IMG/VR virus record: IMGVR_UViG_3300023174_000046
Location: 1 to 64,000 of that record
Strand: one strand, 5' to 3'
DNA length: 64,000 bases
Under the pieces are notes generated by a model. That model saw only the letters and a list, made by a program, of their open reading frames with translations, had not been told where the DNA came from and searched no databases. The position numbers and the translations under genes were made by a program. Shown one piece after another: positions 15,649 to 63,482 of this stretch. Every line of letters starts with the position of its first letter. Position 1 is the stretch's first letter.

Positions 15649-15685
15649 CTCTTGAACTTTACATCTCTTGGTTTATCATAAAATG

Positions 15686-16126
15686 GTGAAACATTTTATA
15701 ACTTGGGATATATTTGATGGCTATATTGATCAACTCTCGCAAAAAATAAAAGAAAATATAGACACCGCAGATTACGATATTGTTGGTATCTCACGAGGTG
15801 GTTTGATTCTTGCTGCAGCACTTGGCTATGCATTAAAAATAAAAAATGTTTATAGTGTTGGTGTAAGAAGCTATTCAAATAATGACGTTCAAGATGAAAT
15901 AGAGGTGTATCAGCATCTGAATCTTGGAAATTTAAAGCGTAATTTATTAGTAGTTGACGATGTATCGGATACAGGCAATACATTTTTATATCTACAGAAA
16001 CTGTTGTCAGATAAAGAATTTATAACTGTAAGTCTTGCTGTGAAGGATAAAACAAAGTGTGTTTCCGATTACAGTGCATTGCGACTAAATTCTGATATTT
16101 GGATAGTATTTCCGTGGGATAAGTAG
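15686..16126 (+). CDS. type I purine phosphoribosyltransferase (Gpt/Hpt-like)
   Basis: GISRGG, LVVDDVSDTGNT PRPP loop, WIVFPW; start ATG 15683 or GTG 15686 after TTGAAC-N16-TATCAT. Confidence 0.85.
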   Translation: MKHFITWDIFDGYIDQLSQKIKENIDTADYDIVGISRGGLILAAALGYALKIKNVYSVGVRSYSNNDVQDEIEVYQHLNLGNLKRNLLVVDDVSDTGNTFLYLQKLLSDKEFITVSLAVKDKTKCVSDYSALRLNSDIWIVFPWDK

Positions 16127-22693: not shown

Positions 22694-22709
22694 ATATATA
22701 ATATACCCT

Positions 22710-35651: not shown

Positions 35652-38105
35652 TTATTTCTTTGTGTTAATTGTAGGTTGTGGTGCAACTCTGTTACCCGAT
35701 TCATTATTCAAGTCCATTGCAATGGTTCTTACTGCATCATTATCTCTTTTCAACGTTAATGGTAGATTCTTAAACGTGTGACTATGACCATACACAATGA
35801 CGCTATCTGGATCTGGAATTTGACCTGCAGTAGTAGTGGTAAATACCGGTGCAGGGTTACCACCCGCTTGACCTGTCATAGAAGCACACACAGGTAGATC
35901 TTTAGTCGCAAAAACTTCAACTGTCCCACCTTGTGGATCAACACCTGTACCAACTAAAGTACCTGTAGGTACATACCCAATTATTGCACCTGTAACTAAT
36001 GCATTATAACCGATAATTTTTGGTAACGCATTATTTGTTTGACCGGTAACAATTGTGCGGTTTGTTTCTTGAATTTCAGTAGGTGCAGTAATATGATTAA
36101 CAGTTAGTTCACCTTCTATGTGTGCACCACCACCCACAACCATGTTACGAGCGACCCCTAAATTACTATCAATAACAACTTGCTGATTGTAGCGTTGCTT
36201 GATATTAACAATATCAGCAATTAATTGTAATTTTTGACCGCCATCAATACACACTTCATTTTCACTGGCTATATTAACTTGCTGACCTGCAATGTTTGTA
36301 ATAGTGCCACTTACATTTACCGGTCCATAACTCTTGAAGTTTATACCACCAGCACCCACCATTAAATTGTATCTGTTACCAATTGTTTGTGTGTAAGTAC
36401 CGCCTGGGAGATCATCCACGTGCACATATTCAACTACCGGGCTTGGTTGCTGGCAGTTGAAAACACCTTGTGGGTGAACAATGACAGCATTAACACTAAT
36501 TTTACCAACCTTATCAATTCTTGTTGAAGGTAAATCATTAATATCCATACCAATTGTTTCAATTTTATTTTTTGTAATATTGATAATTTCGCTACCACCC
36601 ACACCCATTTGCTTCTCCAGATTTGTAAAATTGTCCATGTTATCAGAAATGTATTTTGCTATTTGCTGCTTACGAGGGTCTTCAAGAAAATCACCATCTT
36701 GTGAGCTAGGGCTCAATCCTGAGCCTTTGCATGCTGGGCATGTTTGACCGAAAATTGTTCCAACACCGGGAAATTTGCCACTAGTGGCAGGTATGCCTAT
36801 ACCAAAAGGTATAACTGCAGGGAGCCCCATGTTTGACCATGGTGAATTGATAAGAGAAGTTGTTTCACCAGTACCTGCATAAACAAAGATGTTATTAATT
36901 TTCCAATAAAAATCTTGACTGTCTGCGCAAACTGGACATGCAGCGTTTTTACCGCTTTTTGATTGAAAGGGTGATGTGAGATTTATGAACCCTTTTTTAA
37001 GAGCAGTTGTTCTTTTTGTTTCAAATAATTGCTTGAGATCAGCTAGGCCGCGTAACAGCTCTTTGTATTGTAAATGTGGTGTGTAGTTTAAATTGCCTAT
37101 TTTTCTGTATAAATCACCTCTTATAACATTATCATAATCTCTACCTACGTAAAGATTTTTAAAGCCATTAACAGTTAGGAACTGGTCTTGCATAACCAAC
37201 TTTTGGTCTGATTGAGTTGCAAGTTCTATATTTGTAAAATTATTAAATTCTTTAAATGAACCGGAGAAGTGAGTCATTTTTAGTGACTCACGGTTATCTG
37301 TATTGATAAACTCTAGTGTGCCGCCTTTTTGATTTATAACGTATTTGTTCCGGTAAGTATCAACATTTATATCAAATACATCTTTTCCAGATAGAGAATA
37401 ATTTTCATAATAACCAGGATAGTCTTGACCTGGTGAACTATCACCAACATTATCTAAACTATCATATATGCCTTTCCAATCTTCTTTGCCGTACGCAACA
37501 GCAAAATAAACTGGATGCATAATATCACCATCAGTAAAAAAGACATAGACGTGTGAACCAACGTTGGGCACACCAAACGTACCCTTGGCTCGATTTGAAT
37601 AGCTATTGGGTACATAATTATAGCTATATTTGTTTGTTATGTTTGTATTGTACTTTGCAGGGTCATTAAATGCATCGTTTAGCTTGTATTCAACAGACTC
37701 ATAAACATTTGCTGGCTTCTCTCCAATGTTATCAATATTCTGATTACCGACATCAGTATTTTTTTCTCGTGTTGGTTCGAAAGTGCTTAATCTTGCAGTA
37801 TCAGAAATAGATCCTACAGTTTTAAAGAAATTAAATCTACCACTTGCAGCTTCACCACTCACAGGAGCCGCACATTCAGCCCATGGTAATTGGAGCTTCA
37901 AATCCTCCAATATTGTATTCATGCTGCTATTAATATTGTCACCTAGGAACTTGAATTTTTTATCGTTCAGTGTATCAACCCAGCCGCGATAAGTTGTAGG
38001 CATTAAATGCGGTACCCATACTTTAACGCGTCCTCTTTTCTGTGGATCGTTATTCTGAACTACCATTCCCATGTAGTTGCCGTAGAATTTCTGTCTTTTA
38101 GCCAT
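35652..38105 (-). CDS. gp5/VgrG-like baseplate hub-spike protein
   Basis: Y.G.VV.N.DP.K.GRVKV OB-fold, LPWA, P.VGS.V.VFF..GD...PVY; beta-helix repeats; C-terminal HSH. Confidence 0.85.
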   Translation of the reverse strand: MAKRQKFYGNYMGMVVQNNDPQKRGRVKVWVPHLMPTTYRGWVDTLNDKKFKFLGDNINSSMNTILEDLKLQLPWAECAAPVSGEAASGRFNFFKTVGSISDTARLSTFEPTREKNTDVGNQNIDNIGEKPANVYESVEYKLNDAFNDPAKYNTNITNKYSYNYVPNSYSNRAKGTFGVPNVGSHVYVFFTDGDIMHPVYFAVAYGKEDWKGIYDSLDNVGDSSPGQDYPGYYENYSLSGKDVFDINVDTYRNKYVINQKGGTLEFINTDNRESLKMTHFSGSFKEFNNFTNIELATQSDQKLVMQDQFLTVNGFKNLYVGRDYDNVIRGDLYRKIGNLNYTPHLQYKELLRGLADLKQLFETKRTTALKKGFINLTSPFQSKSGKNAACPVCADSQDFYWKINNIFVYAGTGETTSLINSPWSNMGLPAVIPFGIGIPATSGKFPGVGTIFGQTCPACKGSGLSPSSQDGDFLEDPRKQQIAKYISDNMDNFTNLEKQMGVGGSEIINITKNKIETIGMDINDLPSTRIDKVGKISVNAVIVHPQGVFNCQQPSPVVEYVHVDDLPGGTYTQTIGNRYNLMVGAGGINFKSYGPVNVSGTITNIAGQQVNIASENEVCIDGGQKLQLIADIVNIKQRYNQQVVIDSNLGVARNMVVGGGAHIEGELTVNHITAPTEIQETNRTIVTGQTNNALPKIIGYNALVTGAIIGYVPTGTLVGTGVDPQGGTVEVFATKDLPVCASMTGQAGGNPAPVFTTTTAGQIPDPDSVIVYGHSHTFKNLPLTLKRDNDAVRTIAMDLNNESGNRVAPQPTINTKK

Positions 38106-38132
38106 TGAATTATTAATATTTAATAATATAAT
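38105..38132 (+). promoter_or_regulatory. sigma70-type leaderless promoter of the deazaguanine operon
   Basis: TTGAAT-N16-TATAAT-N6-ATG(38139). Confidence 0.7.
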
Positions 38133-38138
38133 TTATAT

Positions 38139-38951
38139 ATGCTAATGAAAGTATCACACGAGTCTCCTGTATCTATACTTGATCTTTCTAAAGAATATAA
38201 CGATTTTGATTACTGTCTTGTACATCTTCTAGATCAGTATCCTTTATATAAAGATTTCTTTAAATCCGCTAGACAAATTTATAATAGAGAAGTATTACTT
38301 GACAATTCTATTTTTGAATTGGGCAAGGCTTTTGATGGCCATGAGTTCTGGGTAAAGGCTAAAGAAATTATGCCAAATATGTTTATTGTACCAGATGTAC
38401 TTGAGGATACAAAAGGTACAATAGAAAGCTTTAAAGCTTTTGAAGAATCCACAAGTGATATCAAGAGTAGCTTTCTTACAAAAGCCATTGGTGCAGTACA
38501 GGGTAAAAATTGGCACGAGCTAAGAGAATGTTACAAATTTATGGCAGATAATGCCGATATGATTGCCATAAGCTTCGACTTTAGTTACTATCAAGTTACA
38601 GGTGAAGGCACAACGCATTTAGAAAAATGGTGCTCTGGTCGTCAAAGGTTTATTTTGGATTTAATAAATACCGGTGTATGGAATTGGAGCAAGCCACATC
38701 ACTTACTTGGCTGCTCTCTAGCAAAGGAATTTAGGTATTATGTTGATAGAGATATTCACAATATTGTTAGTTGTGATACCAGCAATCCCGTTGTTGCTGC
38801 TATACATGGATTAAAATACGATGCAGATTATGGTTTGCAATCCAAGCCTTCAACAAAGTTAGCTGATTTAATTGAGCATAATTTTACTGATGATCAGCTT
38901 GAACTTGTAAAATATAACACTACAATGTTCAAGAAGATTATTCGCAGATGA
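38139..38951 (+). CDS. dpdA: TGT-fold 7-deazaguanine transglycosylase, DpdA3-like
   Basis: LDNSIFELG, VPDV, AVQG, HHLLGC, SCDTS match TGT-barrel motifs; no Zn-binding motif; next to formyltransferase and queF. Confidence 0.7.
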   Translation: MLMKVSHESPVSILDLSKEYNDFDYCLVHLLDQYPLYKDFFKSARQIYNREVLLDNSIFELGKAFDGHEFWVKAKEIMPNMFIVPDVLEDTKGTIESFKAFEESTSDIKSSFLTKAIGAVQGKNWHELRECYKFMADNADMIAISFDFSYYQVTGEGTTHLEKWCSGRQRFILDLINTGVWNWSKPHHLLGCSLAKEFRYYVDRDIHNIVSCDTSNPVVAAIHGLKYDADYGLQSKPSTKLADLIEHNFTDDQLELVKYNTTMFKKIIRR

Positions 38952-39517
38952 GACCTTGGGTAACATTTTTTTCACAAACCGGTACCGAGATATACGATCT
39001 CAGTAATATTATCAATACATACCCAGATTGTATTGCTACAAATAAACAAGATCATAAAACTACTAATATAGGGTTACGGGCAGTAACTGAATTTAGATCA
39101 CAAAAACTTAATGAAAACATTTGGGTTCAATTGCCACAAAAGCCAACAGTAAGTGATTATGAAAATGCTTTGAAAAATTATAATAAACCTGTTGTAACGT
39201 TACATGGATACTTGAGAATTATTCCAAAAGAAATTTGCGAGAAATATGAAATATACAATCTACATCCAGGTCTTATTAATAAATTTCCAGCATTAAAAGG
39301 TTTTAATCCGCAGGAAAGAGCTTTTGCAGGAGGCTATAGGTTAGCAGGATGTGTAATACACAGAGTAACGCCTGGAGTAGATGAAGGTGAAATATTAATG
39401 AGCCAAGGTGTGAGTATTGAAGGCATGAATCTTGATGGTGTTTATGGTGCTTTACGAGACACTGCACTTGATCTCTGGAAAAGCTTCTTTACATCGTATA
39501 ATATACTAAAACGTTAA
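38948..39517 (+). CDS. dpdN: PurN-like formyltransferase, DpdN-like
   Basis: LHGYLRII, YNLHPG, G.VIH.V..GVDEGEI (N/H/D catalytic set). Confidence 0.75.
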   Translation: MRPWVTFFSQTGTEIYDLSNIINTYPDCIATNKQDHKTTNIGLRAVTEFRSQKLNENIWVQLPQKPTVSDYENALKNYNKPVVTLHGYLRIIPKEICEKYEIYNLHPGLINKFPALKGFNPQERAFAGGYRLAGCVIHRVTPGVDEGEILMSQGVSIEGMNLDGVYGALRDTALDLWKSFFTSYNILKR

Positions 39518-39518
39518 T

Positions 39519-40478
39519 ATGGATATTTCGTTGCATTACGAGAACGTATTTCTCAAGCCTAACTTTAATACTGTACAAACAAGATCACAAATAGACACAG
39601 AAGTTATGTTTTGTGGCAAGACATTCATGCTGCCTGTGATACCTGCAAATATGAAATGCTGTGTTGATAGTGATGTTTGTAAGCTTTTAGATTCTAAGCA
39701 ATGCTTTTATATCATGCATAGATTTGATGAAGACATACAAAATTTTGTACGATATGCAAATTTACAAAATTTTAATACTGTATCCATCAGTGTAGGTATA
39801 CAGCAAAAAGATAGAAACCTTGTAACTGCTATTGGTCAAAGCTTGATGCGAGTAGATTTTATTACAATTGACGTTGCACATGGACATCATTCAAAAGTTG
39901 CAGATCAAATTAAACACATTAAACAAACATTGCCTGGCACAAAAGTTATAGCAGGTAATATCGCTACGTTCGAAGGTGTTGAATATCTGCATAGAGCTGG
40001 TGCTGATGCAGTTAAAGTTGGTATTGGTGGTGGTTATGCGTGTACTACAAAAGATAAGACAGGATTTACTTTTCCTATGTTTAGCTGTATTATAGAGTGT
40101 GCAAAGGACAGAGATGTGCCTATTATTGCAGATGGCGGTGTTCGTAGCAACGGTGATATTGCTAAAGCACTAGTAGCAGGTGCAAAGATGGTGATGTGTG
40201 GTTCTATTTTTGCAGCATGCTCAGATAGTCCTGCACCTGCTGTAAAAGATGCTTCTGGTAGACGATACAAACAATACTACGGGTCTGCTAGTATACACAA
40301 TAAACTTGATAAGAAAAATATTGAGGGTACTATGAAGCTTATGGATACAGATTCGTTTACTTACGAAGAAAAATTGCAAGAAATAAAACAAGACTTACAA
40401 AGTGCAATTAGTTATGCAGGTGGTTGCAATCTTGGTATATTAAATTTAAATAGAGTGGCCTACGGGGTAAGATTATGA
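39519..40478 (+). CDS. guaC: GMP reductase
   Basis: PANM, MHRF, TIDVAHGH, KVGIGGG..CTT, IADGG...GDIAKA; no CBS domains. Confidence 0.88.
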   Translation: MDISLHYENVFLKPNFNTVQTRSQIDTEVMFCGKTFMLPVIPANMKCCVDSDVCKLLDSKQCFYIMHRFDEDIQNFVRYANLQNFNTVSISVGIQQKDRNLVTAIGQSLMRVDFITIDVAHGHHSKVADQIKHIKQTLPGTKVIAGNIATFEGVEYLHRAGADAVKVGIGGGYACTTKDKTGFTFPMFSCIIECAKDRDVPIIADGGVRSNGDIAKALVAGAKMVMCGSIFAACSDSPAPAVKDASGRRYKQYYGSASIHNKLDKKNIEGTMKLMDTDSFTYEEKLQEIKQDLQSAISYAGGCNLGILNLNRVAYGVRL

Positions 40479-40822
40479 ACAAAGAAGATGTAATAAAATA
40501 TGTTGAAAAGAACTTCCCTGTAACATGCAAGGAATTTCAAAGAATTCAAGCCGAACTATATGAGACTTTTTGTAAGAAGCAATTTGATTACGGTCCAGGT
40601 AATATTTCCCTTGGTTCAGACTTAGTTAAAGAAGAAGATAAATTTGCAGCTGTATCTGCTATTGTTGTTAGATTAAACGATAAAATTCAACGACTAATTA
40701 ATTTGGTACTGAAAAAGAAAGCAATGAATTCTGTCAATGAACCAGTTATGGATGCTTTTAGAGACTCTGCTGTGTATTGTGTTATAGCTGAAATAGTTAA
40801 CAACAATAAATGGGGTAAATAA
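40475..40822 (+). CDS. nucleotide-modification-associated all-alpha (DUF1599/MazG-like) protein
   Basis: KK..DYG..N, VRLNDK..RL.NL, E...D.F.D.AVY.VIA. Confidence 0.7.
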   Translation: MNKEDVIKYVEKNFPVTCKEFQRIQAELYETFCKKQFDYGPGNISLGSDLVKEEDKFAAVSAIVVRLNDKIQRLINLVLKKKAMNSVNEPVMDAFRDSAVYCVIAEIVNNNKWGK

Positions 40823-40862
40823 TTGTAGTTGATTACATCTTTAAAATATATTATAATATATA

Positions 40863-41030
40863 ATGTTTAAAAAACTTTTACCTAATTTCTTAACACGTGA
40901 CAAAGAGATAGTAGTTAAATTCAAAGAAATTGAAGAAGAGAATAAAATTCTTCTCGAAGAGATCAGACAGTTGAAGAAGCTTCTTTATGATATAGAATTA
41001 GATTTTGCTGCAAGAGTAAAAAACAAATGA
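40863..41030 (+). CDS. 55-aa coiled-coil protein (not in ORF track)
   Basis: MFKKLLPNFLTRDKEIVVKFKEIEEENKILLEEIRQLKKLL...; TTGATT-N17-TATAAT; ATGA overlap with next gene. Confidence 0.6.
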   Translation: MFKKLLPNFLTRDKEIVVKFKEIEEENKILLEEIRQLKKLLYDIELDFAARVKNK

Positions 41031-41614
41031 TCTTATCGTTTACTGGTCCACAAAGTTCAGGTAAGACTACTCTTCTAAAGAAGTGTAAAGAGTATTATGG
41101 TTCGAAGTTATGTTATATTGATGAAGTTACTAGACTAATTAAACGTTGGCATAATTGTGATATAAATGAAGAAGGTGCAAGTGATGTTACGCAGACATTA
41201 ATTCTAAATAAAGAATTTGAGAATTTGTTTTATAATTACAAAGGATTTGGATTTCAAGGCATATTGCATGATCGTTGCTTGATGGATGGCATGGTTTATA
41301 CAAGTTATTTTGCTGGTAGTAGACTAAATGATTTTCCTGTATCTAATAGCTTAGGTTTGTTATACTATACAAATTATATTAAAAAGTATGATCATATCTT
41401 TTATCCAAGTCCTCATGATGTTCCGCTGGTTGATGATGGTGAGAGAAGCATTAATAAAGAATTTAGGGATGCTATTATTGATAAGTATGAAAATTTTTGG
41501 CTAAAAGATGAGAGATTGAAAGATAAAGTTACTATTTTAAGAGGGACTGTTGACGAGCGAATGGAACAGATTAAGTCAAAGATATGTCAGTTGATGCCAA
41601 GCCTTTCTGTTTAG
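41027..41614 (+). CDS. P-loop nucleotide kinase-like (AAA_28/NadR-type) protein
   Basis: GPQSSGKTT, E..R, DRC..D..VY, DDGER. Confidence 0.8.
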   Translation: MILSFTGPQSSGKTTLLKKCKEYYGSKLCYIDEVTRLIKRWHNCDINEEGASDVTQTLILNKEFENLFYNYKGFGFQGILHDRCLMDGMVYTSYFAGSRLNDFPVSNSLGLLYYTNYIKKYDHIFYPSPHDVPLVDDGERSINKEFRDAIIDKYENFWLKDERLKDKVTILRGTVDERMEQIKSKICQLMPSLSV

Positions 41615-42903
41615 CTCCTTGGGCAGGCATTCACGCACTACCAGATGGGTTGGTGTACCCATGTTGCATGTCTACATTCGATCCCGAAAATTCGTTCGGT
41701 GATCTCAATAAAAATACAATTGAAGATATTTTAAATTCAGAAAAAGCAAAGCAATTTAGATGCAAGATGATGGCAAATAAGCCGGATGAGAGAGCTTGTA
41801 GTCATTGCATAAGTGAAGAAAAAACAGGAACAAAAAGTTTCCGTAATCACTGGAATACTAAGTATGAACATACTCTTCCTTTTGTTAAAGAAACAGATAA
41901 AGATGGTTATTATCGATTTAAAAATTTTCCATATATTGATATAAGACTATCAAGCTTGTGTAATTTTAAATGTAGAATGTGTCATAGTGGCTTGAGCTCT
42001 GCTTGGTTATTAGAAGACATAAAGTATGAATCAAATTATCAAAATTCTTTTAATCTTAAAACCGGTGTTATTGAGATACCACAAAAAGAAAAACTTATTA
42101 AATTTATTATTGATAGGATTGAGCATGTGGAGGAGATTGAGTTTGCAGGTGGTGAACCTTTTCTAATAGCAGATTATTTTACTCTAATTAAAGAATTTAA
42201 AAGAGCAAAAAATTTTAACGTTAGGATAAGATTTCATACAAATGCATCTTCTTTGTATTGTAAGGGTGAATATATACCAAACTTGCTCAAGGAGTTTAAA
42301 AATGTTTTTATAATGTTGAGTATTGACGGTTACAGTGAAGTTAATGACTACATGAGAAAAGGTAGTGTATATAATAAAATTGTTACAAATATAACTTTAC
42401 TTAAACAAATAGTACCACAAGCATTCTTGAGATTGGTACCGACAATTAGCATACCAACTGTATATAGTGTGCCTTTCTTGTATGTAGATTTCTTACGCAA
42501 AGGTTTAATTCGGCATGAGGATATTGCATGCAGACCTCTTTACGGGCCTGAATATCTTAACATACAGACACTACCATTAGAAGATAAATTAAAAATTTTA
42601 AAGTTCTATAATTACTTTATTGATAACATAACAGCTAAACTTCTACAACACTTTCCAGATGAAAGCGTCACATATGTTAAGCAAGAATTTTCATCAATTA
42701 TGAATTTCATGTTGCTTAAAAATCAAATTGTGCAATTTAATAGCAATAGGTTTAAGGAGAGTATTAAGCGGCTTGATATTCGACGAGACGAAAGTTACGA
42801 AGATATTTCACCAGAAACTGCTCATCTTTTATCAGGCAGTGTTTCAATATACAATCTAGATAACAAATATAATGAGTTGAAGACTTTCATAGATAGCATA
42901 TAA
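41584..42903 (+). CDS. radical SAM protein with N-terminal SPASM/twitch domain
   Basis: FCLAPW...PCC...CSHC; CNFKCRMC; GGEPF; SIDG. Confidence 0.88.
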   Translation: MSVDAKPFCLAPWAGIHALPDGLVYPCCMSTFDPENSFGDLNKNTIEDILNSEKAKQFRCKMMANKPDERACSHCISEEKTGTKSFRNHWNTKYEHTLPFVKETDKDGYYRFKNFPYIDIRLSSLCNFKCRMCHSGLSSAWLLEDIKYESNYQNSFNLKTGVIEIPQKEKLIKFIIDRIEHVEEIEFAGGEPFLIADYFTLIKEFKRAKNFNVRIRFHTNASSLYCKGEYIPNLLKEFKNVFIMLSIDGYSEVNDYMRKGSVYNKIVTNITLLKQIVPQAFLRLVPTISIPTVYSVPFLYVDFLRKGLIRHEDIACRPLYGPEYLNIQTLPLEDKLKILKFYNYFIDNITAKLLQHFPDESVTYVKQEFSSIMNFMLLKNQIVQFNSNRFKESIKRLDIRRDESYEDISPETAHLLSGSVSIYNLDNKYNELKTFIDSI

Positions 42904-42912
42904 TATTGTACA

Positions 42913-43833
42913 ATGAATACAGAATTAGATAATAGTAATATTTCAAAGCATTTAGGCAAAATTACCGGGTACAAGTGTACATATGATCCTTCACTTCTGG
43001 TTCGCGAGCCAAGACAAAATAATAGAAAGCATTTGAAAATTTCTGATGAAAATCCGCCTTTCTGTGGCTATGATGTTTGGAATGCTTATGAAGTGTCTTG
43101 CTTGACTCAAGAGGGCATGCCCATTGCTGCTATTGCTAAAGTTGTTTACCCTGCTACTAACAAATATATTGTTGAATCAAAGTCCATTAAACTGTACATG
43201 AATTCGTTTAATATGGAGACATATCAAGGCAATATTATTAGTGTACTGCAGCAGCTTGAAGCTGTAATGGAGAATGATCTTTCTAAATTGCTTGAAACTG
43301 AAGTTAGAGTATGTGTCAGGCTTACTAAGGCCATTGATGATGCAATGTATTACCCAGCATTGTTTCCTTCTGCGTTGTATCCAACGCTTGAGAATAATAT
43401 TGATGTAACGACTATTAAATCGCGTGGCTACAAAGAAGATCCTAAATTACTTGGTTGGTTGGAAGGTGACAGTAGCAAAGTGCAGCGCTTTCATTCAGCT
43501 CTATTAAAGAGTAATTGCAGGGTCACATCTCAACCGGACTGGGGGGATGTTTATATTCATTACAAAGGACCTTATGAACTCAATCAAACATCTCTATTGC
43601 AGTACATTGTTTCGTTTAGAGATGAATGTCATTTTCATGAAGAGATTTGTGAAACGATTTACAAGCGTCTTTATGATTTGACCAAGCCTGAAGAACTGAT
43701 GGTATCTTGCTTATATGTAAGACGGGGTGGTATTGATATTAATCCTATTAGAGCTAATAGTCAGGAACTACTCAAGCAGAACGGTGCCATGTGGGACAAG
43801 TGGAAGTACTTTACTAAGACAGTAAGACAGTAA
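42913..43833 (+). CDS. queF: NADPH-dependent preQ0 reductase (two-domain QueF)
   Basis: DVWNAYEVS, VESKSIKLY.NSF, LLKSNC.VT.QPDWG, FHEEICE, RRGGIDINP.R. Confidence 0.93.
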   Translation: MNTELDNSNISKHLGKITGYKCTYDPSLLVREPRQNNRKHLKISDENPPFCGYDVWNAYEVSCLTQEGMPIAAIAKVVYPATNKYIVESKSIKLYMNSFNMETYQGNIISVLQQLEAVMENDLSKLLETEVRVCVRLTKAIDDAMYYPALFPSALYPTLENNIDVTTIKSRGYKEDPKLLGWLEGDSSKVQRFHSALLKSNCRVTSQPDWGDVYIHYKGPYELNQTSLLQYIVSFRDECHFHEEICETIYKRLYDLTKPEELMVSCLYVRRGGIDINPIRANSQELLKQNGAMWDKWKYFTKTVRQ

Positions 43834-44226
43834 TTAGCCGTTAAGATTCCAGAGTCTGCGAGCTTCTGGGCTTACGCTATTAAAACCGTTATTAACCAAT
43901 GTCTGTGCTGCTGTACCTGTTGCGCAAGTAAAGATTGAGCTTGATCTATCTGCTCTTTGTAGTGCAAATTGCGCACCATTATAGGCTTTGTCAACTCTAA
44001 AAGATGTATTAACACCATCAAGAGAACCAGAAAGAACAGCATATGTACTTGTTAAGCTACCGGTAGCAGCTTGAAATAACAATGATTGTGCGGTGCTGCC
44101 CAAAGTAATTAGGTTAACCCCAAGAAAACTACCTGCAGCATCAAAAGCCGACTTGGATAGATTTAAAGATGTTGGGTTTGAAGCAGCTGGATCTGCAACT
44201 TGATATGAAAATGATATTGATGCCAT
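43834..44226 (-). CDS. putative head decoration/structural protein
   Basis: Ala/Ser/Thr-rich, downstream of gp23, TAAATA-N6-ATG 44226. Confidence 0.55.
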   Translation of the reverse strand: MASISFSYQVADPAASNPTSLNLSKSAFDAAGSFLGVNLITLGSTAQSLLFQAATGSLTSTYAVLSGSLDGVNTSFRVDKAYNGAQFALQRADRSSSIFTCATGTAAQTLVNNGFNSVSPEARRLWNLNG

Positions 44227-44261
44227 ATAATTATTTATTCTGCTATAGTTTATTTTTTTGC

Positions 44262-44294
44262 AAAAAAAAGGGCCCCGCAAGAGGCCCTTTTTTA
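44262..44294 (-). terminator. intrinsic terminator after gp23 (bidirectional shape)
   Basis: A8-gggcc...ggccc-T7. Confidence 0.85.
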
Positions 44295-44354
44295 ACTATC
44301 CTAGGACGTACTAGGTGAAATGTTTTTCTTTCTACAACTCTATCACTTCCAATT

Positions 44355-45851
44355 TTAGAAGTAGACTGATTGTGTTCCAGGGGTAAAGGCAACGCCTAGA
44401 CCCGAGATGATGATAACGTGGTAGTACAAGTTAGCACCAAATATATTGTCGACTACACCGTAGCGGGTCATGAGACCAACACGAGGAGCGAAATCATTTG
44501 GACCAATTGTACGCTGTACCATAACAGGGATGTATGGGCAGTAGATAATACCGGTATCATAAAACTCTGGACCCTTGTAGCCCAATAGGGCGTACTCGAG
44601 AGGAGTTTGACGAGAACCAGATTGAAACTGTGCCTCAGTACGTGTGTCACGATACACATTAAAACGTCCACCAAGTGAACCTACCTTAGCTACGCCTACT
44701 GGTTGTGTGTTTACATTACCCTGTACAGGTACCCACTGGAATTCAGGGAGCATCTCAAGGATAGCGCAAACGCGAGGTGTTGCAACAACAAAGTTGGCTG
44801 CACCACGACGATTACGAACAGCAATACGGTTAGCTTCGATAATTAGTCTCTGATAGAAATCGCGATTACGTTCAACGAGCCAACGACCGTCTGCTGAAGC
44901 TGGGCTCCAAACAGAGTAGCCGGTGCCTGCGCCAGCGTTTAGAGCAACCTGGATCATGCGGATGATCATTTCACGATCGATTTCTGCCTGTAGCTCATAG
45001 CTCATAGCATTTGTCAATTCAGTGTCAATGTCAATACCGTTCATGTTCTTAAGATCTTGCTCCAATTCTACTGACCAGCGAGCGCCTAGTCTACGTGTAC
45101 CGGCTTCAACTGCTGTCTTCTCGAAGGAAACTACGACCTGAGGGATTGCTCCTGTCAATTCGTAATCCTTGAGAATACGTGCTACACCTGCATCTGATCC
45201 GAGGATCGAGAAAGCAGAGTTACCGGACAAGCCGGCAGATGATGTACCAGTGAAACGTGTATCTAGGAACTGATAACCCAATTCTTGACCGTCTGTACCT
45301 GCAGCGGTAGGACCGCCGTAGTTTGTACCTACAGTTGTACCGGTAGCTGATGGTTGACCATCAACACCGTTACCAAGGGCTTCGTTATCGTAACGATAGC
45401 GCAAAGCAAATGCCAAACCAACTGGGCCTGACATTGGCTGAACGCCAACGATTTCATTAGAAATAAGTTCTGGGAACGTTCTACGAATCATCGGAATCAA
45501 GATCTTTGGAAGACGATAATCACCTGCTGCATAGGTATCAGTACCAGGAGTACCAGCTGGGTTATTAACCCAATTGGATGTCTGGAATGTACCTAGAGAA
45601 CCACCGGCATTGCCAGCGGCATTTGAACCGGCCTGATCAGGATATGAAGGGTTATAATTAGGCCCTGCTTCCCTCAAGCACCATTGTTCTTGGTTTTCCA
45701 AGAGAATGGCTGTGTTCAAACGGGTATGATCATCTTCGATTGCTGCAACATTCTTGGAAGAGTAATCCAATACTGGACTCCACTTTTCAAGAAGAGCTGC
45801 GGCTCTTGATTCGTCAATATATGACTGCGAAGGACGAACAACTTTTTTCAT
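44355..45851 (-). CDS. gp23: major capsid protein (T4 gp23 family)
   Basis: KWSPVL, AILLENQ, GVQPM.GP.GL.FALR, WSVELEQDL, E.DRE, YCPYIP, TRYG. Confidence 0.97.
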   Translation of the reverse strand: MKKVVRPSQSYIDESRAAALLEKWSPVLDYSSKNVAAIEDDHTRLNTAILLENQEQWCLREAGPNYNPSYPDQAGSNAAGNAGGSLGTFQTSNWVNNPAGTPGTDTYAAGDYRLPKILIPMIRRTFPELISNEIVGVQPMSGPVGLAFALRYRYDNEALGNGVDGQPSATGTTVGTNYGGPTAAGTDGQELGYQFLDTRFTGTSSAGLSGNSAFSILGSDAGVARILKDYELTGAIPQVVVSFEKTAVEAGTRRLGARWSVELEQDLKNMNGIDIDTELTNAMSYELQAEIDREMIIRMIQVALNAGAGTGYSVWSPASADGRWLVERNRDFYQRLIIEANRIAVRNRRGAANFVVATPRVCAILEMLPEFQWVPVQGNVNTQPVGVAKVGSLGGRFNVYRDTRTEAQFQSGSRQTPLEYALLGYKGPEFYDTGIIYCPYIPVMVQRTIGPNDFAPRVGLMTRYGVVDNIFGANLYYHVIIISGLGVAFTPGTQSVYF

Positions 45852-52189: not shown

Positions 52190-53185
52190 TCAACTCTTTT
52201 CTATTTGCGATTTAATCCAAGAATAAGTCTTTTTTAACCCTTCTGCGAGAGGGTAATTTGGCTGCCAATTTAACTTTTCGCCAATTAATTTATTGCAAGA
52301 ATTTCTGCCCCTTACACCAGTAGGACCATCTAATTTATAATTTTTTGTAATTTTCTTGTTTTCAATGGAGCATGCTAAATCAACTAATTGGTTAATTGTC
52401 ACGCGCTCTTCTGAGCCAATATTGACTGGTCCGAGAAAGTTTGATTCCATCAACCGACGGATACCTTCAACACATTCATCTATATATAGAAATGATCTGG
52501 TCTGCTCACCGTCACCCCAAATTTCAATATCACCAGTTGATTCTAAGACTTTGCGACAAATTGCAGCAGGCGCTTTCTCCTTGCCACCCTTCCATGTTCC
52601 TTGAGGACCAAAAATATTATGAAAGCGTGCAATACGCACATCAATGTTATAATTTCTGTTGTAAGCAAGGTAAAGCCGTTCGCTAAAGAGTTTTTCCCAC
52701 CCATATTCGCTGTCGGGGTTTGCTGGGTAGGCGCTGCTTTCCTCACAATTGGGATTATTTGGATCAAGTTGATTGTGTTCAGGATACATGCAAGCGCTAC
52801 TGCTATAAAATATTTTCTTTAAACCCACATCAACAGCTTCATCTAGAACGTTTAAATTAATTGTTGCAGAATTATGCATCACATCAGCATCATGTGCACC
52901 AGTAAAGATGTAACCTGCTCCGCCCATATCTGCTGCAAGCTGATACACTTCATCAAACGATGTATGGTGCGTGTGCGTGTAATAGTGCCAAGATTTATCC
53001 ATTGCTTTGCGTACGTTGTCACGCTCTCTTAAATCCAAAATAAAGAATTGATCTGCTTGTGTGGAAGAATATTCAGGATATTTTAAATCTACACCACGTA
53101 CAAAATATCCCTCGCTTTTTAATCTTGTAACTAAATGGTTACCAATAAAACCACCTGCGCCTAAAACTAATGCACTTTTTTTCAT
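52190..53185 (-). CDS. NAD-dependent sugar epimerase, GDP-mannose 3,5-epimerase-like
   Basis: GAGGFIG, LAADMGGAG, SSACMYP, YGWEK, GGKEKAPAA.CRK, GVRGRNS. Confidence 0.9.
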   Translation of the reverse strand: MKKSALVLGAGGFIGNHLVTRLKSEGYFVRGVDLKYPEYSSTQADQFFILDLRERDNVRKAMDKSWHYYTHTHHTSFDEVYQLAADMGGAGYIFTGAHDADVMHNSATINLNVLDEAVDVGLKKIFYSSSACMYPEHNQLDPNNPNCEESSAYPANPDSEYGWEKLFSERLYLAYNRNYNIDVRIARFHNIFGPQGTWKGGKEKAPAAICRKVLESTGDIEIWGDGEQTRSFLYIDECVEGIRRLMESNFLGPVNIGSEERVTINQLVDLACSIENKKITKNYKLDGPTGVRGRNSCNKLIGEKLNWQPNYPLAEGLKKTYSWIKSQIEKS

Positions 53186-53772: not shown

Positions 53773-53798
53773 TATGATATGTTATAATATATTTGTTA

Positions 53799-60127: not shown

Positions 60128-60342
60128 TTATTTTTTGAGTGGAAGTGTAAAGCTTTAGAAATTTTATCTAAAATAATTTTTGGACTATGACCTTCCCCGA
60201 GAAGTCTGTTGAATTCAAGCTTAAAAGCTTTTATGAATTCATTTGATAGCTGCAGGTTGCGCGGATAAAAAAGGCGCCTCTTAAATGTAATGGAGCCGTA
60301 GCCTTCAAGTAATGACTTGAACTTTTTATTAAAATTACTCAC
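60124..60342 (-). CDS. small putative internal head protein
   Basis: MSNFNKKFKSLLE N-terminus; TAAATA upstream. Confidence 0.55.
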   Translation of the reverse strand: MSNFNKKFKSLLEGYGSITFKRRLFYPRNLQLSNEFIKAFKLEFNRLLGEGHSPKIILDKISKALHFHSKNN

Positions 60343-60350
60343 ATATATAT

Positions 60351-61097
60351 TTATCTATCTGGTAAGATTAGATTATTATATAATGACTTTTCAAATTTCT
60401 CTTTTTCAGCGATCTGCTCTTGTGTTTTAAGTAGATCTTCTACTTGTGTAGACGTCTGCAAATCACTTATTACACTTTGTTCTTCACCAATAAGATCACC
60501 ATCCACATTCAAATAATATCTTACTAACTGAATTCTTTCTTCTGGTTTGCCAAATATTTCCACAATACCAGGGGAATCATCTTTTGGAAAAAAAGTAGAA
60601 ACACCTGTTTTTTGAATTTGATGCACAATTGTTTTGAAGATATTATCAATTTCTTTGATATAAGACTCATCTACTTCACGCTTATCATCACTAACAACAG
60701 GTACCGGAGCAACACGTGTAATGGGTGTGAAGAAAATAATATCTAAATAACGCATCGACTCACGGACGAGTGGTAAACATTTTTCAATGAATTTGTCATC
60801 AAATTTATCAGGAGTTTTAGTATTGCCCCAAAGAGAATAAACAATATTATCAAGCGGGCAACGGTCAAATATGACTTTATTGCCTTTATCACAATTTTTT
60901 TGCATATCTTCAATCATGCAATTGAGAATCTTCCATTGCAAATCCTTGGTAGTCTCCTTGCTATGACGAGCCTTCTCTTCTTTTATTGCTTTTCTGTAGC
61001 TTGATTCAACCAATCTATATGTTGGCCATTCCTTAAGAAAGTCATTTGTAAATGTTGTCTTACCTTGACATGCAGATCCAGAAACAGCAATTCTCAT
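60351..61097 (-). CDS. P-loop nucleotide kinase-like (AAA_28) protein
   Basis: GSACQGKTT, DRCPLD..VY; downstream of queE. Confidence 0.8.
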   Translation of the reverse strand: MRIAVSGSACQGKTTFTNDFLKEWPTYRLVESSYRKAIKEEKARHSKETTKDLQWKILNCMIEDMQKNCDKGNKVIFDRCPLDNIVYSLWGNTKTPDKFDDKFIEKCLPLVRESMRYLDIIFFTPITRVAPVPVVSDDKREVDESYIKEIDNIFKTIVHQIQKTGVSTFFPKDDSPGIVEIFGKPEERIQLVRYYLNVDGDLIGEEQSVISDLQTSTQVEDLLKTQEQIAEKEKFEKSLYNNLILPDR

Positions 61098-61098
61098 A

Positions 61099-61848
61099 TT
61101 ATACTTTAAGAGCTTTATCCCAGATTACAAGCTGCAAGCGTGGGCTAAAATTAAACATATGTTTCTTGCACAACTCTGCAACCATTGGTGCTTTTTCAGC
61201 TAATTCAGCTCTACTGCCGCAGCAAGGCATCAACCATACACGGTTTTTCGGTACATTAATATCCGGATTGTGTATATATTTCTCGAGAATTTCATCCACA
61301 TCAGCTTCATTACTAACAACAAATTTAAACCCTGAACCATTCTCCGCATGCCACTTTAAAACAGCTGGCTTGTATCTCTTTTCAACAGGATCCCCGTTAT
61401 TAGCCAATTTTGGTGATGTAGTGAATGTTGCTTTAAATTCGTTACCCCACGCTTCATCAGGAAGAATTGTTGCGTTAGTTTCAAAATCAATAACAGGTAC
61501 ATAACCAAAGCGCTCTGCATATGCACGCACAAGCTTAAGCAATTGTTTTTGCTGTATGAGTGGTTCACCACCAGTAATCTTCCATATTGCACCATCATGC
61601 AGCTTACAATTGTAAGCATTCTGAGCCATAAATTCAAAAATTTCGTCAAATGTCATTCTGTTCTTTACAGACCAACTGACAAAACTATCACAACCATGAG
61701 GTGCATCTGCTGATTTGAATCCTTGACATGTTAAGTTACACATTGAAAGACGCATAAAAACAGAAGGTATACCTGCATATTCACCTTCTCCTTCTACAGT
61801 ATAAAAGATTTTATCATCACTTAAAAAGATTGTATTTTCGTTATCCAT
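61099..61848 (-). CDS. queE: 7-carboxy-7-deazaguanine synthase
   Basis: FYTVEGEG...G.PSVF.R...CNL.C...CDS, ITGGEP, ETN.T, SPKL, KFVV, RLQ...W. Confidence 0.92.
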   Translation of the reverse strand: MDNENTIFLSDDKIFYTVEGEGEYAGIPSVFMRLSMCNLTCQGFKSADAPHGCDSFVSWSVKNRMTFDEIFEFMAQNAYNCKLHDGAIWKITGGEPLIQQKQLLKLVRAYAERFGYVPVIDFETNATILPDEAWGNEFKATFTTSPKLANNGDPVEKRYKPAVLKWHAENGSGFKFVVSNEADVDEILEKYIHNPDINVPKNRVWLMPCCGSRAELAEKAPMVAELCKKHMFNFSPRLQLVIWDKALKV

Positions 61849-62840: not shown

Positions 62841-63482
62841 TTAAACACTCCAAGATGTACCTGCAAAAGGATTGCTCATGCCTTTGGTAACTTTGGTACC
62901 AAGAGGTGCACCCATCTCAACGTTAATGCCTGCATTAACTACATTTACCTGCTCAAGTGATGGTTGTAATGTTGTTGCAATTGTATTGTTTGTAACCACA
63001 TGCTTATCAGAAGCATATGGGTTATGATCCGGTACATGTTGATAGCCTGAACTAACAATTGCAGAATTTTTATCATGCTCCCATACTTCAACCCTACTAA
63101 CCCAACATCTATTATTAGTTATGCCTCTTACATGCGCATCAGCTACATCATAACACCAGTCTGCTGTTCTCTCAATACCAACACCTTTGTCCATAACTCT
63201 TAGATCTGCAGCACCTAAGGTGTGTAAATTTTTAAAATGATCTAGCAAAGGATCATCAGCTGAAATGCATAATGTATGATCAAATTGATTTTCTAAGACT
63301 TGCTTAAGTTCCTTTAAACCACCAAAATCTACAACCCAGTTCTTTTCATCTAGATAATTACATTCAAACCAAAATTTTGCTATCAACCTGTATCCATGGA
63401 TATATTTGCAATGGCTGTCTGCTTTCCACTGTCTAAATGCACAACTTCCTAATTCAATTATCTTTGTACTTTCGTATTTCAT
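62841..63482 (-). CDS. queD: 6-carboxy-5,6,7,8-tetrahydropterin synthase
   Basis: SHC..IHGY, VVDFG.LK, FDH, G.E, V.V.E...NSA; TTGATT-N16-TATAAT-N6-ATG. Confidence 0.9.
   Translation of the reverse strand: MKYESTKIIELGSCAFRQWKADSHCKYIHGYRLIAKFWFECNYLDEKNWVVDFGGLKELKQVLENQFDHTLCISADDPLLDHFKNLHTLGAADLRVMDKGVGIERTADWCYDVADAHVRGITNNRCWVSRVEVWEHDKNSAIVSSGYQHVPDHNPYASDKHVVTNNTIATTLQPSLEQVNVVNAGINVEMGAPLGTKVTKGMSNPFAGTSWSV

What the first reader, a model, noticed from the sequence alone, without database searches (positions are those of the whole stretch)
39519..41614. GMP reductase + MazG-like protein + nucleotide kinase inside the dpd operon: a possible pre-replicative G-exclusion module
Seen: guaC, a DUF1599/MazG-like all-alpha protein and a P-loop kinase lie directly between dpdA/dpdN and queF, with tight or overlapping junctions. 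A second similar kinase sits next to queE (60351-61097). Known: GuaC converts GMP to IMP, and Z-genome and hmC phages pair synthesis of a modified dNTP with destruction of the canonical one. Inference: the modified base is made at nucleotide level and phosphorylated by the phage kinase(s), while GuaC and the MazG-like enzyme drain GMP/dGTP so that the polymerase incorporates the analogue. This would be a guanine counterpart of the PurZ/MazZ/DatZ logic rather than post-replicative base exchange, and I do not know of it being worked out.
Basis: inference. Interest (0 to 1): 0.8.

Follow-up and report, generated by a model that had tools for sequence, protein, structure and literature searches.

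The report
Phage deazaguanine cassette with nucleotide kinase
This phage gene cluster for replacing guanine in DNA by a 7-deazaguanine always pairs its base-swapping enzyme with a nucleotide kinase. That suggests the new base is installed on free nucleotides before replication, while the GMP reductase is a real but optional extra and the supposed MazG-like protein is instead a helper of the formyltransferase.

Summary
They sit in a tight + strand operon, DpdA3-DpdN-GuaC-DUF1599-p55-kinase-radical SAM-QueF. A second kinase follows QueE.

The kinase is the universal partner of DpdA3: it is present in 51 of 51 informative loci. Kinases of other families flank distant DpdA3-like genes in five more phage lineages. 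None flanks DpdA1/2 in six control phages.

A nucleotide (pyro)phosphatase also recurs near DpdA3, as MazG, PRA-PH, HD, MazZ-like or dUTPase-like proteins. This genome has no recognisable one beyond an ordinary dUTPase.

The DUF1599 protein shows no MazG similarity. It is fused to the formyltransferase DpdN in some relatives, so it is probably DpdN's partner.

GuaC has all GMP reductase hallmarks but is optional: 23 of 53 related contigs carry it, and two complete cultured genomes lack it. It was recruited at least twice.

The pre-replicative idea is therefore partly supported, resting on the kinase rather than on GuaC or a MazG. It contradicts the published post-replicative view, and no biochemical test has been done.

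The parts
38139..38951 (+). DpdA3-type guanine transglycosylase homologue (270 aa), a minimal TGT-fold TIM barrel
   Evidence: 43% identity to the Flavobacterium phage immuto_2-6A DpdA and 46% to the CP220 protein. AF2 model pLDDT 88. It matches tRNA-guanine transglycosylase at Foldseek E 3e-9 and Z 18 over 232-238 residues. There is no Pfam hit. It is acidic and has one invariant Cys, so no CxCxxC..H zinc site.
38948..39517 (+). DpdN-like PurN-family formyltransferase (189 aa)
   Evidence: PF00551 E 6e-16. The N-x-H-P and D-E-G catalytic motifs align to PurN structures. 45% identity to immuto DpdN.
39519..40478 (+). GuaC, a type-2 GMP reductase (319 aa); an optional insertion between DpdN and the DUF1599 gene
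   Evidence: NF003966 330.6 bits (cut-off 344) and PF00478 E 2e-55. Full-length alignment to the B. anthracis GMP reductase 1YPF, E 6e-73, with the Cys-x-Thr loop, IADGG and GS motifs conserved. Present in 23 of 53 related loci.
40475..40822 (+). DUF1599/Nmad1 four-helix protein (115 aa), probable partner of DpdN
   Evidence: Family assignment. Fused to DpdN in P0244, P0253, P0259 and P0280, in the same cassette context. No MazG similarity.
40863..41030 (+). 55-aa ORF of unknown function, overlapping the kinase start by 4 nt
   Evidence: Only chance-level coiled-coil Pfam hits. Small ORFs occupy the same slot in some relatives.
41027..41614 (+). Kin1, a thymidylate-kinase-like P-loop (d)NMP kinase (195 aa), the universal partner of DpdA3
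   Evidence: AAA_28 and phrog_2107. The family profile aligns full-length to thymidylate kinase 2PBR (E 1e-7), and also matches dNK and NadR-RNK. P-loop, DRC and DDGxRS motifs are conserved. Present in 51 of 51 informative DpdA3 loci.
41584..42903 (+). N-terminal-twitch radical SAM/SPASM protein (439 aa), an insertion specific to this genome
   Evidence: NF033640 302 bits. Absent from all 55 related loci. Only 22-25% identity to radical SAM proteins of T4-like Vibrio phages.
42913..43833 (+). QueF (bimodular preQ0 reductase, 306 aa)
   Evidence: QueF_N and QueF domains; TIGR03138 260 bits.
60351..61097 (-). Kin2, a second AAA_28/dNK-like kinase (248 aa), co-transcribed after QueE
   Evidence: The QueD-PhoH-QueE-Kin2-p72 order is kept in 45 of 60 related contigs.
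61099..61848 (-). QueE (7-carboxy-7-deazaguanine synthase)
62841..63482 (-). QueD (PTPS family)
   Evidence: PF01242 E 2e-17.
15668..16126 (+). Small phosphoribosyltransferase (152 aa), related to the PRTase inside the immuto deazaguanine cluster
   Evidence: PF00156 E 4e-12. 28% identity to immuto gp211.

Best explanation
The flagged stretch is the middle of a conserved phage cassette that makes a 7-deazaguanine base, here probably formyl-preQ1, and puts it into DNA in place of guanine.

Shown:
- The cassette always contains DpdA3 and a thymidylate-kinase-like kinase.
- GuaC is a bona fide-looking GMP reductase inserted between DpdN and its DUF1599 partner.
- The DUF1599 protein is not detectably MazG-like.

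Inferred mechanism:
1. [quoted passage not shown]
2. DpdA3, a stripped-down TGT barrel, exchanges guanine for the deazaguanine on a free guanine deoxynucleotide, most simply dGMP, rather than only on finished DNA.
3. DpdN, with its DUF1599 partner, formylates the aminomethyl group. DpdN's relative PurN also acts on a sugar-phosphate-linked amine.
4. Kin1 phosphorylates the modified dNMP. Kin2 and/or host Ndk carry it on to the triphosphate.
5. The phage PolB incorporates it.

This is the logic of T4 gp56/gp42/gp1. In other DpdA3 lineages a MazG, PRA-PH, HD, MazZ-like or dUTPase-like enzyme would supply dGMP and remove dGTP. GuaC is an optional booster. It turns GMP, including GMP salvaged from the guanine that DpdA3 releases, irreversibly into IMP. 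That lowers the competing G pool and moves purine towards A.
For: (1) Kinase linkage.
- Kin1 orthologues follow DpdA3 in all 51 loci that extend far enough, including immuto and CP220, and abut it directly in the minimal DpdA3-Kin1-QueF cassettes.
- Distant DpdA3-like genes (profile E 1e-15 to 1e-21) sit next to kinases of other families.
- Aeromonas phage Ahp1 has the T4 gp1-type DNMK (PF21448, E 2e-17) followed by a DCD/dUTPase-like gene.
- Chryseobacterium phage MA9V-3 and Cellulophaga phi19:2 have AAA_18 kinases.
- Bacillus BSTP12 and Weizmannia Youna2 have another P-loop protein.
- Campylobacter CC_R7 has a Kin1-family kinase.

(2) Controls. Six DpdA1/2 loci (9g, CAjan, BcepGomr, Dp-1, Qyrzula, ZHS) have no kinase or NTP pyrophosphatase within 2.5 kb.

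(3) Recurrent phosphatases of unrelated families next to DpdA3.
- HD in CP220.
- PRA-PH in immuto.
- MazG in phi19:2.
- PF18909, the MazZ family, in L047.
- DCD-like in Ahp1 and MA9V-3.

(4) Literature (PMC10516641).
- All three tested DpdA3 phage types (CP220, phiST, immuto) replace 100% of G, against 0.1-30% for the other DpdA subfamilies.
- The ADG nucleoside was found in the cytoplasm of CP220-infected cells.
- DpdA3 did not work in the authors' E. coli model.

(5) DpdA3 itself is only 270 aa and acidic. It has no zinc motif and about 100 fewer residues than TGT.

(6) GuaC.
- The catalytic loop and motifs are conserved.
- A type-1 GMP reductase (NF003470, 551 bits, above its cut-off) was separately recruited after QueF in L042.
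Against: - There is no biochemical evidence. Every characterised TGT/DpdA enzyme acts on a polymer.
- Large phages often cluster nucleotide-metabolism genes, so adjacency could reflect shared timing of expression.
- The window's own genome has no recognisable dGTP-hydrolysing enzyme.
- The minimal cassettes, which lie on fragmentary contigs, show none either.
- GuaC competes with the pathway's own need for GTP as precursor, and complete replacement does not require it, since immuto and CP220 lack it.
- The residue-level mapping of DpdA3's aspartates onto the TGT catalytic residues was inferred from invariance, not from a superposition.
Confidence: 0.5

Rival explanations
1. Post-replicative exchange, the published view. 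DpdA3 is an unusually efficient DNA guanine transglycosylase that swaps every G in finished DNA. The kinases, GuaC and the phosphatases are general nucleotide-supply genes that merely share an early or middle operon with it.
For: DpdA3 has the TGT fold, and its relatives act on polymers (PMC10164549). The authors of PMC10516641 propose this. GuaC occurs in many large phages not known to carry a deazaguanine system: Bacillus phage G, Cr30, XacN1, YS40 and crAss-like phages. The cassette is an insertion hotspot that also holds unrelated genes.
Against: It does not explain why kinases of four or more unrelated families sit next to DpdA3-type genes in eight lineages, including 55-kb siphoviruses, while none sits next to DpdA1/2. 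It also leaves unexplained the 100% replacement, the free nucleoside in infected cells and the failure of DpdA3 alone in E. coli.
Confidence: 0.3
2. Ribonucleotide route. A phage phosphoribosyltransferase couples the free deazaguanine base to PRPP. Kin1 makes the diphosphate, and the phage ribonucleotide reductase and Ndk give the dNTP. DpdA3 only mops up residual G in DNA or tRNA. GuaC lowers competing GMP.
For: Small PRTases occur in the immuto cluster (gp211), in this window (15668-16126), about 8 kb upstream of DpdA3 in several relatives, and beside a P-loop protein and RNR in phi19:2. The phage encodes RNR at 20441-23774.
Against: The PRTase is not adjacent to DpdA3 in most loci, and its specificity is unknown. 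DpdA3, not the PRTase, is the gene invariably coupled to the kinase. The route leaves DpdA3 without a necessary role.
Confidence: 0.1
3. GuaC acts on the modified nucleotide. It would reductively deaminate a 7-deazaguanine nucleotide at C2, so that phages carrying GuaC hold a different final base, a 7-deazahypoxanthine derivative, from immuto.
For: GuaC sits inside the operon between DpdN and its partner, with 1-nt and overlapping junctions. Phages with dI in place of dG exist (PMC13091555).
Against: All residues compared match ordinary GMP reductases, and the scores are close to the equivalog cut-offs. A second recruitment involves a fully canonical type-1 enzyme. There is no direct evidence.
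Confidence: 0.05

Closest known systems
[quoted passage not shown]
   Same: The same gene families occur in the same order, DpdA3-DpdN-kinase-QueF, at 43-46% identity, plus FolE, QueD, QueE and QueC elsewhere in the genome. This phage probably has the same end product and the same complete G replacement.
   Different: The window adds GuaC, a DUF1599 protein, a 55-aa ORF and a radical SAM gene. Immuto instead has a PRA-PH-type pyrophosphohydrolase two genes upstream of DpdA3 and a PRTase in the cluster. The paper does not mention the kinase (0 occurrences of 'kinase') and assigns the step to post-replication.
T4 hydroxymethylcytosine pathway (gp56 dCTPase, gp42 dCMP hydroxymethylase, gp1 dNMP kinase); from established knowledge
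   Same: The proposed logic is the same: hydrolyse the canonical dNTP to the dNMP, modify the dNMP, re-phosphorylate it with a phage kinase, and let the polymerase incorporate it, giving complete replacement. In Aeromonas phage Ahp1 a DpdA3-like gene is literally followed by a gp1-type DNMK and a dUTPase/DCD-family gene.
   Different: The modifying step would be a base exchange by a TGT-fold enzyme rather than a thymidylate-synthase-like C5 addition. The base is built separately from GTP. The window has no recognisable dNTPase.
Z-genome module PurZ/MazZ/DatZ (PMC8342488, PMC8065100)
   Same: A phage module that pairs synthesis of a purine analogue nucleotide with removal of the canonical one. 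A MazZ-family gene (PF18909) sits in the DpdA3 cassette of one relative, L047, and CP220 has an HD domain upstream of DpdA3.
   Different: There is no PurZ-like synthetase, and the window has no MazZ or DatZ homologue. GuaC has no counterpart in the Z system.
DNA-level DpdA systems (bacterial DpdA/B/C; phage DpdA1 and DpdA2, for example 9g, CAjan, Dp-1)
   Same: The same preQ0 precursor pathway and a TGT-fold transglycosylase.
   Different: Those enzymes are larger (317 aa in 9g; bacterial DpdA has insertions that form a positively charged DNA-binding surface). They modify at most about 30% of G and have no adjacent kinase. A DpdA3 profile shows no sequence similarity to 9g DpdA.
GMP reductase GuaC as an auxiliary metabolic gene of large phages
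   Same: The same enzyme family, with 42-46% identity to Firmicute-type GuaC and to the gene of Bacillus phage G.
   Different: Here it is embedded in a DNA-modification operon, translationally coupled on both sides. A different GMP reductase type was recruited to the same kind of cassette in L042.

Membership tests
GMP reductase (GuaC) | IMPDH/GMPR TIM barrel without a CBS subdomain, about 320-350 aa | tested here: met
   PF00478 covers residues 5-302, E 2e-55. Continuous alignment of residues 6-307 to B. anthracis GMP reductase 1YPF.
GMP reductase (GuaC) | Catalytic Cys in the G-x-G-x-G-x-x-C-x-T-(K/R) loop, plus the IADGG and GS motifs | tested here: met
   The motifs line up with those of 1YPF in the printed alignment.
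GMP reductase (GuaC) | Score above the curated equivalog cut-off | tested here: inconclusive
   NF003966 scores 330.6 bits against a cut-off of 344. The relative in L042 passes NF003470, at 551 against 397.
GMP reductase (GuaC) | NADPH-dependent conversion of GMP to IMP | not testable with these tools
   This needs an enzyme assay.
DUF1599 / Nmad1 | Match to PF07659 and to its fold | tested here: met
   The Pfam hit is sub-threshold (16 bits against 25) but appears in 10 of 13 orthologues. Atlas feature score is 0.97 to DUF1599 clusters. AFDB clusters of that name match at E 1e-8, TM 0.93 and at E 7e-4.
MazG-like all-alpha NTP pyrophosphatase | Sequence or fold similarity to MazG, PRA-PH or MazZ | tested here: not met
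   No PDB match by Foldseek, VIA-align or profile search. hhalign to a MazZ-family alignment gives probability 1%, and there is none to PRA-PH. PF03819 is absent from the genome.
MazG-like all-alpha NTP pyrophosphatase | dGTP pyrophosphohydrolase activity | not testable with these tools
   This needs an enzyme assay. The fusion to DpdN argues for another role.
Nucleoside monophosphate kinase (TMPK/dNK fold) | N-terminal P-loop, a DR(x) substrate motif and a LID arginine, about 180-200 aa | tested here: met
   Invariant G7, G12-K13, D82-R83, D137 and R140 in the family alignment. Full-length profile alignment to thymidylate kinase 2PBR, E 1e-7. PF13521 is above its cut-off.
Nucleoside monophosphate kinase (TMPK/dNK fold) | Substrate specificity for the modified dGMP analogue | not testable with these tools
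   Inferred only from the invariant linkage to DpdA3.
DpdA / TGT superfamily | TGT-type TIM barrel | tested here: met
   Foldseek E 3e-9 and Z 18 with 232-238 residues aligned to Z. mobilis TGT.
DpdA / TGT superfamily | Three invariant active-site aspartates | tested here: inconclusive
   D55, D86 and D213 are invariant across 14 DpdA3 sequences, in the expected order. No residue-level superposition was available.
DpdA / TGT superfamily | Zinc-binding CxCxxC..H subdomain and nucleic-acid-binding insertions | tested here: not met
   There is one invariant Cys, the length is 270 aa and the pI is 4.7-6.6. No Pfam TGT hit.
DpdA / TGT superfamily | Acts on DNA | not testable with these tools
   The authors of PMC10516641 could not get DpdA3 to work in E. 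coli.
PurZ/MazZ/DatZ-type exclusion module | A dedicated (d)NTP hydrolase for the canonical nucleotide, encoded with the synthesis genes | tested here: not met
   The window's genome has no PF18909, HD, MazG or PRA-PH, only an ordinary dUTPase at 114.6 kb. The feature is met in other DpdA3 lineages.

The most novel reading that the evidence does not exclude
DpdA3 is not a DNA-modifying enzyme but a TGT-fold base-exchange enzyme that works on free guanine deoxynucleotides. Together with a dedicated dNMP kinase, and in most lineages a dGTP-hydrolysing enzyme, it forms a pre-replicative pathway that explains complete replacement of G by 7-deazaguanines. That would overturn the published conclusion that all deazaguanine DNA modifications are post-replicative. 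GuaC would be an optional G-pool sink.
Probability: 0.5. Interest if true: 0.85.

Novelty: new variant of a known kind. Interest (0 to 1): 0.7.

Why it matters
Complete replacement of a canonical base is known for C, T and A, and in each case the pathway rewrites the dNTP pool. For G the mechanism is open. The only published proposal is post-replicative exchange by DpdA3, which has never been reconstituted.

The invariant DpdA3-kinase pairing, and the recurrent phosphatase, give a concrete and cheap test: DpdA3 on dGMP, plus the kinase. They also explain why DpdA3 alone failed in E. coli. If the idea holds, it adds a new reaction type, nucleotide-level transglycosylation. It would also give an enzymatic route to 7-deaza-dGTP analogues, which are useful reagents. 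It would further define which genes are needed to transplant full G replacement. It also corrects the roles of two genes: the DUF1599 protein is a DpdN partner, and GuaC is an accessory.

Tried and rejected
- Megablast of the cassette against the phage collection found nothing. The phage is known only from IMG/VR-type contigs.
- The 115-aa protein found no significant match in Foldseek PDB, VIA-align wide or a profile search of PDB sequences.
- hhalign of its family against a MazZ-like sequence, a MazZ-like alignment and the immuto PRA-PH protein gave probabilities of about 1% or less. I therefore dropped the MazG-like label.
- A word-index protein search with the same family returned about 7,800 unannotated near relatives and added nothing on function.
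- hhalign of the DpdA3 profile against 9g DpdA1 gave no similarity, and a DpdA3 profile found no PDB sequence. The link to TGT rests on the fold alone.
- The promoter and terminator scan of 37800-44500 was at chance level (31 found, 29 expected) and does not define the operon.
- tblastn with three DpdA3 queries did not find Cellulophaga phage phiST. A guessed accession happened to be phi19:2 of the same species.
- The Crippen 2019 paper, and two identifiers tried from memory for a 2013 NAR paper on DNA base-modification systems that I recall as the source of the 'Nmad' domain names, were not held.
- I considered the radical SAM gene as a core part of the pathway and rejected that, because it is absent from all related loci.
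- I did not use read laying or the sequencing-run search. Reads cannot show base identity or the timing of modification.
Full report
WHAT IS THERE

The window is the first 64 kb of a 217-kb IMG/VR virus record that CheckV rates complete. Between a baseplate-hub gene (35652-38105, -) and the major capsid gene (44355-45851, -) lies a + strand operon. Its genes, in order:
- DpdA3-like, 38139-38951
- PurN-family formyltransferase (DpdN-like), 38948-39517
- GuaC, 39519-40478
- 115-aa protein, 40475-40822
- 55-aa ORF, 40863-41030
- P-loop kinase Kin1, 41027-41614
- radical SAM/SPASM protein, 41584-42903
- QueF, 42913-43833

Junctions are overlaps or gaps of at most 40 nt. The rest of the pathway is scattered. 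On the - strand, QueD (62841-63482) lies upstream of QueE (61099-61848), which is followed 1 nt later by a second kinase, Kin2 (60351-61097). FolE is near 65 kb, and QueC is at 84.8 kb beside a family B DNA polymerase. The phage also encodes ribonucleotide reductase, a dCMP deaminase, a small phosphoribosyltransferase and an ordinary dUTPase.

THE INDIVIDUAL GENES

GuaC. It aligns over its whole length to the Bacillus anthracis GMP reductase structure (E 6e-73). The catalytic Cys-x-Thr loop, the IADGG motif and the GS motif are all conserved. It scores 330.6 bits on the type-2 GMP reductase equivalog, whose cut-off is 344. I read it as a working GMP reductase.

Kin1. It has the P-loop, a D-R-C motif and a D-D-G-x-R-S lid. 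As a family profile it aligns end to end with thymidylate kinase. It also matches deoxynucleoside kinases and the NadR ribosylnicotinamide kinase domain. It is a nucleoside or nucleotide kinase of unknown specificity, and closest to a dNMP kinase.

DpdA3.
- It has no Pfam hit. Its confident model (pLDDT 88) is a TGT-type barrel, at Foldseek E 3e-9 and Z 18.
- It is only 270 aa, about 100 residues shorter than TGT, and it is acidic.
- It has a single invariant cysteine, so the TGT zinc site is missing.
- Three aspartates are invariant, in the order expected for the TGT/DpdA catalytic residues. I could not confirm this by superposition.

The 115-aa protein. It is a four-helix protein of the DUF1599, or 'nucleotide modification associated domain 1', family. 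The Pfam hit is weak but consistent (10 of 13 orthologues). Protein language-model neighbours agree. Two AFDB fold clusters of that name match, at E 1e-8 with TM 0.93 and at E 7e-4. Nothing links it to MazG. Three PDB searches were empty. Profile-profile comparison with a MazZ-family alignment gave a probability of 1%.

COMPARATIVE GENOMICS OF THE CASSETTE

Fifty-three IMG/VR contigs encode DpdA3 at 56-89% identity. The cultured relatives are the immuto Flavobacterium phages (43%) and the CP220-like Campylobacter phages (46%). In all of the IMG/VR relatives examined in detail the cassette sits between the hub and capsid genes. Mapping the window's proteins onto these loci gave the following.
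- Kin1 is present in every locus that extends past DpdA3: 51 of 51, including immuto gp203 and CP220 gp057. The other four loci are truncated.
- In a minimal form the cassette is just DpdA3-Kin1-QueF, with the first two genes abutting.
- DpdN is in 40 IMG/VR loci and the DUF1599 gene is in 40. Thirty-nine loci carry both.
- GuaC is in 23 loci. Twenty carry it between DpdN and the DUF1599 gene. Two carry it 3.7 kb upstream, at only about 54% identity. One carries it directly after QueF, and that copy is a different, type-1 GMP reductase that passes its equivalog cut-off (551 bits against 397).
- A whole-record search found an IMPDH/GMPR-family gene in 20 of 48 records, and none in the complete immuto or CP220 genomes.
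- The radical SAM gene is in no related locus.
- The cassette is an insertion hotspot. Other relatives carry an Ig-like protein, sugar-modification genes, or a LOG-family protein plus a MazZ-family protein at the same place.

THE DUF1599 PROTEIN BELONGS WITH DpdN

Where GuaC is absent, the DpdN stop overlaps the DUF1599 start. An exhaustive profile search found 2,458 clusters of this family. Four representatives of 300-312 aa are fusions. Their first ~180 residues are 35-40% identical to the window's DpdN, and their last ~110 residues are the DUF1599 domain. One such fusion occurs in three independent assemblies, in the order hub | DpdA3-sized gene | fusion | AAA_28 kinase | QueF | capsid. So GuaC is an insertion that splits a DpdN-DUF1599 pair. 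The DUF1599 protein is more likely a partner of the formyltransferase than a dGTP-draining enzyme. The genome has no MazG, HD, PRA-PH or MazZ-family gene.

THE KINASE LINK REACHES BEYOND THIS CLADE

Distant DpdA3-like genes are 23-28% identical by tblastn. The DpdA3 profile recognises those of Youna2, BSTP12, MA9V-3, Ahp1 and phi19:2 at E 1e-15 to 1e-21; it did not detect the CC_R7 gene. Each is next to deazaguanine precursor genes and a kinase.
- Aeromonas phage Ahp1: DpdA3-like, then a T4 gp1-type dNMP kinase (PF21448, E 2e-17), then a dCTP-deaminase/dUTPase-family gene.
- Chryseobacterium phage MA9V-3: an AAA_18 kinase directly upstream, and a DCD-like gene nearby.
- Bacillus phage BSTP12 and Weizmannia phage Youna2: a 183-187-aa P-loop protein, then DpdA3-like, then an overlapping DNA polymerase A.
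- Campylobacter phage CC_R7: QueC, DpdA3-like, a Kin1-family kinase, DNA polymerase.
- Cellulophaga phage phi19:2, the same species as phiST: QueD, QueE, FolE, MazG, a 115-aa ORF, an AAA_18 P-loop protein, DpdA3.

CP220 has an HD-plus-kinase fusion directly upstream of DpdA3. Immuto has a PRA-PH-type pyrophosphohydrolase two genes upstream. By contrast, six DpdA1/2 loci (9g, CAjan, BcepGomr, Dp-1, Qyrzula, ZHS) have no kinase or pyrophosphatase within 2.5 kb. Kin2 is also conserved: the QueD-PhoH-QueE-Kin2 order is kept in 45 of 60 related contigs.

MECHANISM

[quoted passage not shown] The same paper records three further points (PMC10516641):
- the other DpdA subfamilies reach at most about 30% replacement;
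- the ADG nucleoside was found in the cytoplasm of CP220-infected cells;
- DpdA3 could not be made to work in E. coli.

That paper does not mention a kinase. The library holds no paper that treats DpdA3 as a nucleotide-level enzyme.

From established knowledge, every well-understood complete base replacement in phages is made at the nucleotide-pool stage: hmC in T4, hmU, dU and Z. The repeated, non-orthologous trio of phosphatase, DpdA3 and dNMP kinase has the shape of T4 gp56/gp42/gp1. I therefore favour this route:
1. dGMP is the acceptor. It comes from dGTP hydrolysis or from host DNA breakdown.
2. DpdA3 exchanges guanine for the deazaguanine.
3. DpdN with DUF1599 formylates it.
4. Kin1, then Kin2 or host Ndk, phosphorylate it.
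5. PolB incorporates it.

These steps are inferred. Only the gene content and the linkages are shown.

GuaC fits as an optional sink. The exchange releases one guanine per nucleotide, salvage returns it to GMP, and GuaC removes it irreversibly to IMP. Its two independent recruitments argue that it helps. Its absence from phages with 100% replacement shows that it is not required.

VERDICT

It is wrong about which genes carry the argument. The main rival is the published post-replicative model, and simple enzyme assays would decide between them.

Noticed in passing
window 41584-42903 (+): A 439-aa N-terminal-twitch radical SAM/SPASM gene (NF033640, 302 bits) is wedged between the kinase and QueF, overlapping the kinase by 31 nt. 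It is absent from all 55 related loci. Its nearest phage relatives are 22-25% identical radical SAM proteins of T4-like Vibrio phages such as nt-1. It could further modify the base, or be an unrelated moron.
   Followed up: partly
L047:9236-10497 (IMGVR_UViG_3300020477_000896): In one relative the slot between DpdN and the kinase holds two genes instead of the DUF1599 gene. One is a LOG/TIGR00730-family protein (nucleotide 5'-monophosphate nucleosidase-like). The other is a PF18909 protein, the dATP/dGTP diphosphohydrolase or MazZ family. Both act on free nucleotides.
   Followed up: partly
L042:12962-20667 (IMGVR_UViG_3300045738_001693): This cassette carries a block of sugar-modification genes between the kinase and QueF: a DegT aminotransferase, a polysaccharide deacetylase, an FkbM methyltransferase and a GNAT. 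Its QueF has a 130-aa N-terminal extension and is followed by a canonical type-1 GMP reductase.
   Followed up: partly
window 60124-63482: The order QueD, PhoH (opposite strand), QueE, Kin2 and a 72-aa ORF is conserved in 45 of 60 related contigs. PhoH is therefore a fixed neighbour of the precursor genes. CP220 also has a PhoH-like gene 3 kb from DpdA3.
   Followed up: partly
L057:3336-6692 and L058:3387-6719 (Bacillus phage BSTP12, Weizmannia phage Youna2): In these ~55-kb phages a DpdA3-like gene is preceded by a small P-loop protein, and the DNA polymerase A gene overlaps its end. In BSTP12 the DpdA3-like gene is annotated as 'NadR'.
   Followed up: partly
G000:C1:81743-85456 (outside the window): The phage's family B DNA polymerase lies directly upstream of QueC, whose open frame is 341 aa, longer than the 210-position QueC model. 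It may carry an extra domain.
   Followed up: no
window 52190-58630 (-): A run of - strand genes includes an NAD-dependent epimerase/dehydratase and a family-2 glycosyltransferase, sugar-nucleotide enzymes of unknown target.
   Followed up: no
window 1-8440: The first 8 kb has a higher G+C content (0.42-0.45 against about 0.34 elsewhere) and a strong GC skew. It contains a 1365-aa ORF on the - strand (4343-8440), which I did not annotate.
   Followed up: no
L129:30290-34386 (Cellulophaga phage phi19:2): A phosphoribosyltransferase, a P-loop protein with a T4 gp1-like G-x4-GKD motif and the ribonucleotide reductase large subunit are adjacent. This is a second nucleotide-level module in a phage species reported to replace all G by 7-deazaguanine.
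   Followed up: no
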